A DNA stretch of 63,332 nt, filler included, from Olpidium bornovanus S191 (taxonomy: Eukaryota > Fungi > Olpidiomycota): the NCBI GenBank assembly GCA_017911155.1. It is 28 parts of 28 records of this genome, joined end to end, with 100 filler letters (N's around TTAATTAATTAA, not from the genome) between each part and the next. Parts side by side here need not be neighbours in the genome. Positions count along the whole stretch, not along the records: positions 16,588 to 19,436 come from JAEFCI010005352.1; 27 more parts are not named here. The stretch is one strand, 5' to 3'. The notes beneath the pieces are model-generated. The model searched no databases and was not told where the DNA came from. It saw only the letters and a list, made by a program, of their open reading frames with translations. The position numbers and the translations under genes were made by a program. Below, one piece after another: positions 16,488 to 19,436 of this stretch. Each line of letters begins with the position of its first letter. Position 1 is the stretch's first letter.

Positions 16488-16629
16488 NNNNNNNNNNNNN
16501 NNNNNNNNNNNNNNNNNNNNNNNNNNNNNNNTTAATTAATTAANNNNNNNNNNNNNNNNNNNNNNNNNNNNNNNNNNNNNNNNNNNNAAAAAAAAAAAAA
16601 AAAAGAAACACCGCGGCACGGGAGACGGA

Positions 16630-17335
16630 CCTGCATAGATCGGCCGCACGAAAGTGTCGGCACTTTCGACCGCGGTGACGTCGGAGATTCCCTGAACGTC
16701 AAGGAGCGCGGCAGCGCGCGGCAAAACGTTCTTGCCGAAGGCGGTGTGGGCGGCAACGACGTGAGAGGAGCCGAGGGATTTGACGGCGGCCACCACGAGC
16801 GGCGCGAAGTCCTCAGGGAGGCCATGATCGTATTCCGCCTTCTTGGCGACGATAACCTTCTCGACGCCGTCGGTCCGGGCAATCTGCTTCACGACGTTGT
16901 CCACGTTGCTGCCGGCGACGAGCGCGGTGACGCCGGAGCCGAGGGCCTTTGCCGCCGTGACCGCGCTGAGCGTGGCCGGATTGAGGGAGTTGTCCTTGTG
17001 CTCGACGACGAGCAGTGTGCTCGAAGCGGACGCGTAGCCGCGGCGGAAGGCGCCGACGCGCTGCGACGGGGTTTTGCGATTTTGTTTTTTGTTTTTTTTT
17101 TTTTTTTTTTTTTTTTTCGCGAAGAAGCGACGAGAAGACAAGCGAGACGGGGAAAGTGAGCCCATGGGGGGGTTAGGGGGCCGGGCGTCGGTGCATGGCC
17201 AGCGTTGAAAAGCGGGGGACCGGCCGACCAAATTCGAGACCAGGTGACTAAATTCGAGACCGGACTCACCAGCGGGAACCGGGCGGCGGGTCTGCCGCTC
17301 GCGACGGCGAGGCGTCGGACGGACGTAGCTAGCAT
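16630..17335 (-). CDS. ETFA: Electron transfer flavoprotein alpha subunit, N-terminal part with mitochondrial presequence
   Basis: MLATSVRRLAV presequence; STLLVVEHKDNSLNPATLSAVTAA; HTAFGKNVLPRAAALLDVQGISDVTAVESADTFVRPIYAG. Confidence 0.95.
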
Positions 17336-17865
17336 GTTTCTTTTTTCTTGCCCCGCCCCGCCTTTCTAGCGACGGGGGGGGGTGATTATCCTTCCGCCGG
17401 GAGTTGAAAGGCCACCTTCGCGTCCGCCGGGAGCGAGCTTCGGCGGATGATGGATGATAATGATGATGACGACGAGCGGCGGTGTGTGCGCGTGTCGCTC
17501 TCTCTTTTCTCTTTTCTCTCTCTCTTTTCTGCTTCTGCGCGGGGCGAGAAGAAAAAAAACCCCCGCCCCCGCCATTTTTCCCCGCAGCGCCTTTTTTTCC
17601 CCGGGCGGCAATTCGCGCAACCCGATTCTCGCCCTTCATCCGAAGTCCGCCGCCCGACCCAAGCCCCCGGTCGCAACCCGCGCGGACACCGGCAGCGGCT
17701 CTCTTTTCGTCGGCTTCCTGCGTCGCGCTGGCCTCAACGAGGGGGGGGAGGGGGATCCCCTCCAACCCGTCCTGAAAAGATCGGGAAGTCGACGAATGCA
17801 GAGTCGCCACACACACGCCCCCGACCTGCAGCGCGCCCAACCCCCCGCCCGTCTTGGCACTCGCG

Positions 17866-19436
17866 ATGACCGAGGCGGCGGGGCAAACGCCGACGCTGCC
17901 GACCGTCCTGACGGTCAGCGGCAGCAGGGTGGACCCCTATGCCTTCTCTCAACCGTACGGGGCGATGCAACTGGTTCTTGTCGTAAGCAGCGCCCTTTTC
18001 CAGGGGTCCCGACTTGTTTTCCCGTTTCATCCTCCACGCGCATAGTTTCTCAACCCCTCCCCCCCGTTCGCGCCCGCCCGTTCTTCGGTTTATCAGTATT
18101 TCAACGGCGTTATGCTCCTATTCGGAGCTGTCTGTAACGCCTTGGTGCTAATGGTGTTGCTCAAAAACAAGAACCTGTGCAAGGGTGAGTTGCGTGAAGA
18201 CAACTTAACTGGATGCGATACCGGAAGCGCGTGGAAATTTTCCTCGCGGGCTCGGGGCTGATTGCGGCAAACGCTCTTTTCCAGTCCGGTACTTCCTCTC
18301 AGCAAACCTGACGTTAGCAGACCTCGGACTTTGTTTGGTGAACTTTCCAATGTTCCTCTACAACGGTTCGCAAAAACGTTACGCTGCAGGCCAGGTTCGC
18401 CCTTTTCGACAAAAAATAGTGAATGTGAAACCGTTGACTGCCACACACACGGTCGATGCTGACACAGCCCGCGGCGTTTGCAGGTCGGCTGCACACTCCA
18501 TGCTTTTTTCATTGTCCTGTTTTGCTCGCAGAGCGTGCTCACGCTGACAGCGACGACATACGAACGATACCTCATGGTGGTGAAGGGCAGGGAGTTTACC
18601 ATGGGGATCTTCAGGAAATTCCTTCCGATCAACTGGTGCTTTTCCATCCTGCTGGCGGGGATGCCGTTTCTGTGGGCGGACAACCCGTATCCGTTAAGAT
18701 CGTCGAGGATATACTGCACAGGTGGGTGGCGAACGTCAGTTTGGGAGGGACCGTCGTTTCAACAGATTTGGTCTAGTGGGTTTTGGCCCCCTCCGCCCCA
18801 TCCCCCTTCCGAGGAGAGCTAAGCCGACAAGGCCGGCCGATTTGTCTGGCAGGAGGCTGGTACTTCTCGGGTCCTTATGAAGTCCTCTTCACGGTGCTCT
18901 GCTGCTGCGTGATCACTACGGGGCTCTGCGGCATCACGATCATGTACCGAAGGATATTCGAGGCCATCCGGGACAACACGCGCCGGCTCACGTCGGCAGG
19001 CGGGAGCGTCCTGGAAGAGTCGCCCCGGTTTCTGGACGGGCCGCAGTTGGGCACCAGGGCGGTCTGCAACAGCCCCGACACGGTTTCTTCCTCGTTTCCG
19101 CTGGTCGACTCCTGCGCAAGCGGCGGCGGCGGGGGCGGCGACGCCGACGTCGCGAACGCGACGACGACGACGTTCGGCCGCGCGGTCCCGGTGTTGGCCG
19201 CCGTCGGGATGGCGAACACGAGCGCAGCGAGACGGGCGCTGCGGAGCGAACGAGCCATCGCCCGCATAACGCTCATCGTCACGGCCACGTTTTTCGCCTG
19301 TTGGGGCGCATACAACATGATGTTTTTGCTGGAGATGTTCACGCAGCGCGAATGTGAGAGAGTTCAAAGGCCTGCGACCCTGCCGTTTTCCCCGCCTGCT
19401 CTTGCGCTGCAGGAATACCTTGGCGGCCGTGTCGGT
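17866..19436 (+). CDS. Rhodopsin-family (class A) GPCR, opsin-like; exons 17866-17982, 18097-18184, 18285-18394, 18484-18721, 18853-about 19353; TM7 missing
   Basis: Phase-consistent GT-AG splicing gives TM1 GAVCNALV, TM2 NLTLADL, TM3 GCTLHAFF...YERYLMVVK, TM4 WCFSILLAGMPF, ECL2 PYPLRSSRIYC, TM5 ...MYRRIF, TM6 ERAIARITLIVTATFFACWGAY. Confidence 0.9.

What the first reader, a model, noticed from the sequence alone, without database searches (positions are those of the whole stretch)
17866..19436. Animal-type opsin-like GPCR in a fungus, lacking both known counterion glutamates
Seen: a clean five-exon model giving TM1-TM6 with class A hallmarks (GN in TM1, NLxxADL, C3.25, ERY, W4.50, ECL2 Cys, CWxxY) and a long third intracellular loop. 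Aligned by eye to bovine rhodopsin, E113 corresponds to His (GCTLHAFF vs GCNLEGFF) and E181 to Arg (PYPLRSSRIYC vs RYIPEGMQCSC). Known: rhodopsin-family GPCRs are absent from Dikarya but opsin-like ones occur in some chytrids and blastoclads, where zoospores are phototactic or chemotactic. Inference: either a photoreceptor with non-canonical Schiff-base chemistry or a ligand receptor (for example host-root chemosensing). TM7 and the retinal lysine are not in the contig.
Basis: partly seen in the sequence, partly recalled or inferred. Interest (0 to 1): 0.8.

Follow-up and report, generated by a model that had tools for sequence, protein, structure and literature searches.

The report
Orphan class A GPCR, not an opsin
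This is a real, expressed and spliced gene for a rhodopsin-family (class A) G-protein-coupled receptor, probably from an early-diverging fungus. Its closest relatives lack the retinal-binding lysine, so it is most likely a chemical-ligand receptor of an already known kind and not a light sensor.

Summary
The five-exon model (17866-19353, +) is confirmed exactly by RNA contigs from two runs. Its exons match Pfam 7tm_1 colinearly. Position 3.28 (bovine E113) is His and the E181-equivalent is Arg.

The opsin reading is not supported. Profile and fold searches place opsins level with aminergic, peptide and lipid receptors. Three relatives were found: an Olpidium bornovanus gene (63% identity, identical exon lengths and intron phases) and two transcriptome proteins (56-57%). 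All three have Leu at 7.43 (bovine K296) and no Lys anywhere in TM7.

The window's own TM7 lies beyond the contig edge. The RNA contigs read on as E-S-G-P-L-L-D-G-L-S-A, which matches the relatives up to 7.39. That stops four residues short of 7.43.

All G-protein microswitches seen are canonical: N1.50, D2.50, S3.39, ERY, W4.50, Y5.58, E6.30 and CW6.48. The relatives also have NSxxNPxxY.

Best reading: a ligand-activated orphan class A GPCR from a small, rare clade. It resembles the Rhodopsin-family GPCRs already described in chytrids and blastoclads. It is a new member of a known kind, and interest is modest. The organism could not be named.

The parts
17576..17865 (+). 5' UTR (minimum extent), containing an out-of-frame upstream ATG at 17796
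   Evidence: RNA contig X1 record 4 begins at 17576 and runs uninterrupted to 17982. The uATG was read from the sequence.
17866..17982 (+). Exon 1: start codon, extracellular N-terminus and start of TM1 (39 codons)
   Evidence: ATG at 17866 and GT donor at 17983. Joint 17982/18097 is seen in the RNA contigs of X1 and X3.
18097..18184 (+). Exon 2: TM1 with N1.50 (18136-18138) and ICL1
   Evidence: Joints seen. It aligns to TM1 of P0001 and of the Olpidium gene, where the exon is also 88 nt.
18285..18394 (+). Exon 3: TM2 (NLTLADL, D2.50 at 18320-18322) and ECL1 with an NGS sequon
   Evidence: 7tm_1 at 13.6 bits, profile 20-51. Joints. The Olpidium exon is also 110 nt.
18484..18721 (+). Exon 4: TM3 (C3.25, H3.28, S3.39, ERY), ICL2, TM4 (W4.50) and ECL2 (Arg 18697-18699, Cys 18715-18717)
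   Evidence: 7tm_1 at 32.1 bits, profile 56-125. Joints. Residue table.
18853..19353 (+). Exon 5: TM5 (Y5.58), long ICL3 of about 90 residues, TM6 (E6.30, CWGAY) and start of ECL3
   Evidence: 7tm_1 at 34.9 bits, profile 151-228. Joint 18721/18853 and the donor at 19353 are seen.
19354..19436 (+). First 83 nt of intron 5, cut by the contig edge. The TM7 exon lies beyond the piece.
   Evidence: RNA contigs leave the piece at 19353 and continue with 30 nt not present in it. These encode S-G-P-L-L-D-G-L-S-A. The homologous Olpidium intron is 127 nt.

Best explanation
The locus is the 5' five-sixths of an expressed gene for a Rhodopsin-family (class A) GPCR. It belongs to a small, conserved clade that is rare in public data.

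The protein keeps the parts that let class A receptors pass an agonist-induced rearrangement on to a heterotrimeric G protein. These are the sodium/water-pocket residues N1.50, D2.50 and S3.39 (plus N7.45 and S7.46 in relatives), the ERY-E6.30 ionic lock, Y5.58, the CW6.48 toggle, and NPxxY with helix 8 in relatives.

It lacks every residue specific to retinal photochemistry. Position 3.28 is His, the E181-equivalent is Arg, and position 7.43 is Leu in all relatives.

The most likely function is a receptor for a diffusible, still unknown ligand, acting through G proteins and not through light. The invariant His3.28 and ECL2 Arg at the pocket entrance hint at a polar or anionic ligand.

Shown here: the gene structure, its expression, class A membership, the residues at 3.28 and in ECL2, and the absence of a TM7 lysine in relatives. 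Inferred: G-protein coupling, activation by a ligand, and Leu at 7.43 in this particular gene.
For: Splicing and expression: four introns and the fifth donor are confirmed in RNA contigs of two independent studies.

Class A membership: 7tm_1 matches exon by exon, and the ortholog P0001 scores 140 bits over the whole profile. An AlphaFold2 model of the ortholog shows seven TM helices plus helix 8.

Orthologs: Olpidium bornovanus BJ554DRAFT_4394 is 63.4% identical, with exon lengths 88/110/238 and intron phases identical to the window's. P0001 and P0004 are 56-57% identical.

Microswitch residues are invariant in all four members. Position 7.43 is Leu and TM7 holds no Lys in the three relatives. 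The window's transcript reads on as ESGPLLDGLSA, colinear with PLLDGI[SA]A of the relatives.

Purifying selection: dN/dS between P0001 and P0004 is 0.17 overall and 0.08 in TM1-5.

No special opsin affinity appears in sequence searches or in the language-model look-alikes.
Against: The window's own 7.43 was not read. It lies four codons beyond the last base recovered.

Foldseek ranks squid rhodopsin and a Limulus opsin first, though by a hair. This may only reflect the long TM5 and TM6 helices of the model.

P5.50 and P6.50 are missing (Gly and Ala/Val), which is unusual for class A.

No ligand, G protein or expression stage is known. The model has only moderate confidence (pLDDT 65.5).
Confidence: 0.8

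Rival explanations
1. It is a photoreceptor with non-canonical chemistry. Retinal or another chromophore would be bound either through a Lys present only in this gene's unseen TM7 or non-covalently, with His3.28 or another residue standing in for the glutamate counterions.
For: Opsins (squid rhodopsin, Limulus lateral-eye opsin) are nominally the top structural matches. A chytrid Rhodopsin-family GPCR with Lys and counterion has been proposed as an opsin (PMC5410147). The window's 7.43 is unread.
Against: Leu at 7.43 and no TM7 Lys in all three relatives, which span 56-63% identity. The window's TM7 start is colinear with theirs. The E181-equivalent is a positively charged Arg and is invariant. 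Sequence profiles give no preference for opsins. The canonical D2.50/S3.39/N7.45/S7.46 pocket is, from general knowledge of the family, typical of ligand-activated receptors.
Confidence: 0.05
2. It is a ligand-independent (constitutively active or scaffold-like) class A receptor, in the manner of some orphan receptors such as GPR61. It would signal through its long ICL3 and C-terminal tail and not through an agonist pocket.
For: The best single-sequence PDB match of exon 4 is GPR61, although weak at E 0.03. P5.50 and P6.50, which help the agonist-driven movements of TM5 and TM6, are replaced. ICL3 is long and variable, and relatives have a long tail with a conserved DISV[IV]VTV motif.
Against: The extracellular-facing residues H3.28, the ECL2 motif YPLRSS.IYC and Y6.51 are as conserved as the cytoplasmic switches. 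That pattern argues for a selected binding site. The ionic lock E6.30-R3.50 is intact, which favours a controlled inactive state.
Confidence: 0.1
3. The gene is not fungal. It would belong to another soil protist (for example an amoebozoan), and the Olpidium relative would be a mis-binned contig of that non-axenic metagenome assembly.
For: The O. bornovanus assembly was made from non-axenic zoospores by a metagenome approach (PMC7865070) and has a BUSCO score of 27 (PMC13358043). Rhodopsin-like GPCRs are also reported in amoebozoans (PMC12716839). The organism labels were coded, and soil metagenome runs hold parts of the locus.
Against: By eye, the family shares the ECL2 pattern Y.L.SS..YC..W, the TM6 pattern FF..W..Y and the helix 8 pattern LDKRF-like with the published chytrid and blastoclad Rhodopsin-family proteins. 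The neighbouring ETF-alpha fragment's nearest Atlas cluster is eukaryotic with Ascomycota commonest.
Confidence: 0.2

Closest known systems
Olpidium bornovanus hypothetical protein BJ554DRAFT_4394 (contig JAEFCI010012455.1), plus two unnamed transcriptome proteins (P0001, P0004)
   Same: These are orthologs. The Olpidium gene is 63% identical and the two transcriptome proteins 56-57%. Exon lengths (88/110/238 nt) and intron phases match those of the Olpidium gene. H3.28, ERY, the ECL2 motif YPLRSS.IYC, CW.xY and YN.MFLLEM are invariant.
   Different: ICL3 and the C-terminal tails diverge. The deposited Olpidium protein model is mis-spliced and reads through introns. None of these proteins has been studied.
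Fungal Rhodopsin-family GPCRs of Allomyces macrogynus, Spizellomyces punctatus and Batrachochytrium dendrobatidis (Krishnan et al. 2012, PMC3251606)
   Same: All are class A GPCRs of zoosporic fungi with ERY and NPxxx. By eye they share the ECL2 pattern Y.L.SS..YC..W, an aromatic TM6 FF..W..Y and helix 8 LDKRF. The members I checked have no Lys at 7.43.
   Different: None of the 12 published sequences contains this clade's signature peptides. A scan of 1.84 billion representatives with exon 5 did not reach them at E<1e-3. The relationship was not tested by computation here.
[quoted passage not shown] 2017, PMC5410147)
   Same: It is a non-metazoan class A GPCR whose best structural template is squid rhodopsin, with ERY and NPxxF/Y.
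   Different: That protein is reported to keep the Schiff-base Lys and a counterion. This clade has Leu at 7.43, His at 3.28 and Arg at the E181 position.
Choanoflagellate Rhodopsins of Salpingoeca macrocollata and S. punica (PMC12716839)
   Same: These are non-metazoan class A receptors whose closest structural matches are opsins but which carry Ser or Val at K296.
   Different: They come from a different lineage. No sequence comparison was made here.
Metazoan opsins (bovine rhodopsin, squid rhodopsin)
   Same: They share the seven-TM class A fold, the C3.25-ECL2 disulfide cysteines, ERY, E6.30, W6.48 and Y6.51. They are marginal top Foldseek hits.
   Different: This clade has no Lys at 7.43 in relatives and no Glu at 3.28 or at the E181 position. 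It is no closer to opsins in sequence than to aminergic, peptide or lipid receptors.

Membership tests
Rhodopsin-family / class A GPCR (Pfam PF00001 7tm_1) | Significant match to the 7tm_1 profile | tested here: met
   Exon 4 scores 32.1 bits and exon 5 scores 34.9 bits, both above the 30.5-bit gathering score and colinear with exon 3. Ortholog P0001 scores 140 bits over profile positions 2-260.
Rhodopsin-family / class A GPCR (Pfam PF00001 7tm_1) | Seven transmembrane helices | tested here: inconclusive
   Six hydrophobic segments lie in the piece, and the start of TM7 comes from the RNA loose end. Relatives have all seven plus helix 8 in the AlphaFold2 model. The window's own TM7 is not in the contig.
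Rhodopsin-family / class A GPCR (Pfam PF00001 7tm_1) | Conserved microswitches: N1.50, D2.50, E/DRY, W4.50, C3.25-ECL2 Cys, CWxP, NPxxY | tested here: met
   All are present, with two qualifications. CWxP is CWGAY, with no Pro at 6.50. NPxxY is seen only in relatives (NPFIY, NPFLF).
Opsins (type 2, retinal-binding) | Schiff-base lysine at 7.43 (bovine K296) | tested here: inconclusive
   This cannot be read in the window's gene, because the RNA read-out stops at 7.39. All three relatives have Leu at 7.43 and no Lys anywhere in TM7.
Opsins (type 2, retinal-binding) | Glutamate counterion at 3.28 (E113) or in ECL2 (E181) | tested here: not met
   His at 3.28 and Arg at ECL2 Cys-6, invariant in all four family members.
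Opsins (type 2, retinal-binding) | Closer to opsins than to other class A subfamilies | tested here: not met
   In the profile search of PDB, 5-HT1A scores 55.2 bits, CCK-A 52.6, alpha-1A 52.1, LW opsin 50.9 and rhodopsin 47. Single-exon searches list no opsin among the best hits. Foldseek puts squid rhodopsin first only marginally, at E 8.5e-8 against 2.6e-7. No phylogeny was possible.
Fungal Rhodopsin-family cluster (Krishnan et al. 2012) | Clusters with the 12 chytrid and blastoclad sequences; ERY and NPxxx motifs | tested here: inconclusive
   The motifs are shared, and the ECL2, TM6 and helix 8 patterns look similar by eye. The published sequences hold none of this clade's signature peptides.

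The most novel reading that the evidence does not exclude
The clade would be a lineage-restricted zoospore chemoreceptor of Olpidium-like fungi. It would read a host- or substrate-derived polar or anionic small molecule through the invariant His3.28 / ECL2-Arg pair. That would make it the first class A GPCR with a defined sensory role in a fungus.
Probability: 0.12. Interest if true: 0.6.

Novelty: new member of a known kind. Interest (0 to 1): 0.3.

Why it matters
Rhodopsin-family GPCRs outside animals bear on when the largest animal receptor family arose, and on how zoosporic fungi sense their surroundings. This gene adds a well-supported, expressed member and a small conserved clade that includes Olpidium, which is regarded as the closest zoosporic relative of the terrestrial fungi. 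It does not change the picture, because such receptors are already documented in chytrids, blastoclads, amoebozoans and choanoflagellates. The attractive claim of a non-canonical animal-type opsin is not borne out. The invariant His3.28 and ECL2 Arg give a concrete handle for anyone who wants to find the ligand.

Tried and rejected
Recovering the window's TM7
- The search for homologous proteins with the exon-5 ORF found nothing.
- With P0001 it found only P0001 and P0004. With the family profile it added only the Olpidium protein and distant animal GPCRs.
- A degenerate DNA pattern for YN.MFLLEM.TQ matched the window, L001 and L002 but nothing in the metagenome contigs.
- The search for related loci with the exon-4 alignment returned one locus, a bacterial chance match to LAGMPFLW.
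- Read laying shows only 30 loose letters and is capped at one call, so position 7.43 stays unread.

Naming the organism
- Raw-read runs X21 and X24 laid no reads at the 6% of each run that was sampled.

Comparison with published fungal GPCRs
- Signature peptides are absent from the supplements of PMC3251606 and PMC5410147.
- I did not type those sequences into tools, so the comparison is by eye only.

Readings considered and rejected
- An aminergic receptor: position 3.32 is Ile or Gln, not Asp.
- A pseudogene: the frame is open, the gene is spliced and expressed, and relatives are under purifying selection.
- The in-piece CAG acceptor near 19412 as the start of exon 6: it would give an in-frame TGA, and the RNA does not use it.

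No Rfam family matches the piece.

Full report
**What is in the sequence**

The usable piece is 16588-19436 and has 60.7% G+C. On the + strand, five exons join into an open frame of 351 codons that starts at the ATG at 17866. They are 17866-17982, 18097-18184, 18285-18394, 18484-18721 and 18853-19353, each bounded by GT..AG.

Logan RNA contigs from two independent studies (runs X1 and X3) carry exactly these four joints. They also show a fifth donor at 19353. Beyond that donor they continue with 30 nt that are absent from the piece.

**What family it belongs to**

They hit Pfam 7tm_1 in colinear order:
- exon 3: 13.6 bits, profile positions 20-51
- exon 4: 32.1 bits, profile positions 56-125
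- exon 5: 34.9 bits, profile positions 151-228

The last two are above the 30.5-bit gathering score. Six hydrophobic segments sit where TM1-TM6 should be.

By motif register the protein has N1.50 (as 'CN', not 'GN'), D2.50 in NLTLADL, C3.25, S3.39, ERY, W4.50, the ECL2 Cys, Y5.58, E6.30 and CWGAY. It has Gly at 5.50 and Ala at 6.50 where most class A receptors have Pro. About 100 residues separate Y5.58 from E6.30, so the third intracellular loop is long.

Position 3.28 (bovine E113, taken as C3.25+3) is His. The residue six before the ECL2 Cys (bovine E181) is Arg.

**Relatives**

A phmmer scan of 1.84 billion cluster representatives with exon 5 found only three proteins at E<1e-3. P0001 came from a Logan transcriptome. 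P0002 is NCBI's 'MAG: hypothetical protein BJ554DRAFT_4394, partial [Olpidium bornovanus]'. P0003 is an unrelated animal-type GPCR. P0004, which is 90% identical to P0001 over the 7TM region searched (82% over the full length), came from a second transcriptome.

I rebuilt the Olpidium gene from its contig by homology. The deposited model reads through introns. The rebuilt gene has exons of 88, 110 and 238 nt and the same intron phases as the window's gene, and it is 63.4% identical to it. P0001 and P0004 are 56-57% identical to the window's protein. P0001 matches 7tm_1 over the whole profile at 140 bits.

dN/dS between P0001 and P0004 is 0.17 overall and 0.08 in TM1-5, so the family is under purifying selection. 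Two scans of the JGI metagenome contigs found no further member. The clade is rare in public data.

**The opsin question**

In all three relatives TM7 reads PLLDGI[SA]AT.AL.NSTCNPF[IL][YF]. Position 7.43, six residues before N7.49 and equal to bovine K296, is Leu. TM7 contains no Lys at all.

The window's transcript continues as ESGPLLDGLSA. This is colinear with the relatives up to 7.39 and stops four residues short of 7.43. The lysine is therefore not directly excluded for this gene, but it is very unlikely. His3.28 and the ECL2 Arg are invariant in all four members, so no member of the family has either opsin counterion.

Sequence searches show no preference for opsins:
- Exon 4 alone hits GPR61, 5-HT5A and NK1.
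- Exon 5 alone hits S1P5, BRS3 and opioid receptors.
- The family profile scores 5-HT1A at 55, CCK-A at 52.6, alpha-1A at 52.1, GPR84 and LW opsin at 50.9, and bovine rhodopsin at 47 bits.
- The ESM Atlas look-alikes are a mix of moody-like, GPR27, GPR85, GPR26, TAAR, CCK and 'rhodopsin' clusters, all at 0.95-0.96.

An AlphaFold2 model of P0001:25-385 has pLDDT 65.5 and pTM 0.62, with seven helices plus helix 8. Its best Foldseek hit in PDB is squid rhodopsin, and its best hit in the AFDB clusters is a Limulus opsin. The margin is slight: E 8.5e-8 and TM 0.62 against 2.6e-7 and 0.60 for 5-HT1A. The long TM5 and TM6 helices of the model resemble those of squid rhodopsin and may account for this. 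That is an inference.

The same pattern has been published for choanoflagellate Rhodopsins, which have opsins as top structural matches and no K296 (PMC12716839).

**How it most likely works**

The cytoplasmic switch set is intact: the ERY-E6.30 lock, Y5.58, and NPxxY with helix 8 in relatives. So is the D2.50/S3.39/N7.45/S7.46 pocket. From established knowledge of class A receptors, this is the apparatus of an agonist-controlled, G-protein-coupled receptor.

The extracellular-facing residues are as conserved as the switches. These are H3.28, the ECL2 motif YPLRSS.IYC and Y6.51. That argues for a selected binding site. Position 3.32 is Ile or Gln, so the receptor is not amine-type.

I therefore read it as an orphan, ligand-activated class A GPCR. 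A basic His/Arg pair at the pocket mouth may favour a polar or anionic ligand, but this is speculation.

**Comparison with what is known**

Rhodopsin-family GPCRs were reported in 2012 in Allomyces (3), Spizellomyces (8) and Batrachochytrium (1), with ERY and NPxxx motifs (PMC3251606). An 'opsin-like' Spizellomyces member that retains Lys and a counterion was modelled in 2017, and the authors noted that the other chytrid homologs lack the lysine (PMC5410147). Its homologs were later mapped across zoosporic fungi (PMC9616733).

The published sequences contain none of this clade's signature peptides. By eye they share an ECL2 pattern Y.L.SS..YC..W, an aromatic TM6 and an LDKRF-type helix 8. I could not test this by alignment, because those sequences had no tool reference.

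The present gene is thus a new member, and with its three relatives a new small clade, of a known kind.

**Organism**

Run labels were coded. The closest named relative is from Olpidium, and the neighbouring ETF-alpha fragment's nearest Atlas cluster is eukaryotic with Ascomycota commonest. An early-diverging fungus is likely, at roughly 0.8, but is not shown. The Olpidium assembly itself is a low-completeness metagenome bin (PMC7865070, PMC13358043).

**Verdict**

Novelty is 'new member of a known kind', and interest is about 0.3.

Noticed in passing
window 16588-17335 (- strand): This is the 5' part of a mitochondrial electron-transfer-flavoprotein alpha-subunit gene. Exon 1 runs 17335-17270 (MLATSVRRLAVASGRPAARFPL, presequence-like). 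The intron 17269-17061 reads CT..AC on the + strand. Exon 2 runs from 17060 to at least 16630, where the transcript splices on to sequence that is not in the piece. The Pfam ETF domain scores 115 bits.
   Followed up: partly
window 17270-17865: The ETF-alpha gene and the GPCR gene lie head to head. One RNA contig of run X3 (3989 nt) runs through both genes without a break. Either the two 5' UTRs overlap or the assembler merged them. The spacer holds long poly-T and CT-rich tracts (17074-17127, 17488-17540).
   Followed up: no
window 17796-17798: An out-of-frame upstream ATG lies 70 nt before the GPCR start codon, inside the transcribed 5' UTR. It is a possible uORF that overlaps the main start.
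   Followed up: no
L002 (Olpidium bornovanus JAEFCI010012455.1) 231-3061: The deposited protein model BJ554DRAFT_4394 (P0002, 512 aa) is mis-spliced. It lacks TM1-TM2, reads through introns, and skips most of TM6 and all of TM7. A homology-guided model with exons 997-1084, 1232-1341, 1438-1675, 1766-2218 and 2346-3061 gives a complete 7TM protein from TM1 onward.
   Followed up: yes
P0001 about residues 404-415, P0004, and L002 exon 6: A short motif, DISV[IV]VTV, is conserved in the otherwise divergent C-terminal tails of all three relatives. Its function is unknown; it could be a trafficking or partner-binding signal.
   Followed up: no
window 18362-18370; P0001 ECL1: An N-glycosylation sequon in ECL1 (NGS in the window, NAT in P0001 and P0004) is conserved in three of the four members. 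The Olpidium gene has NAF there.
   Followed up: no
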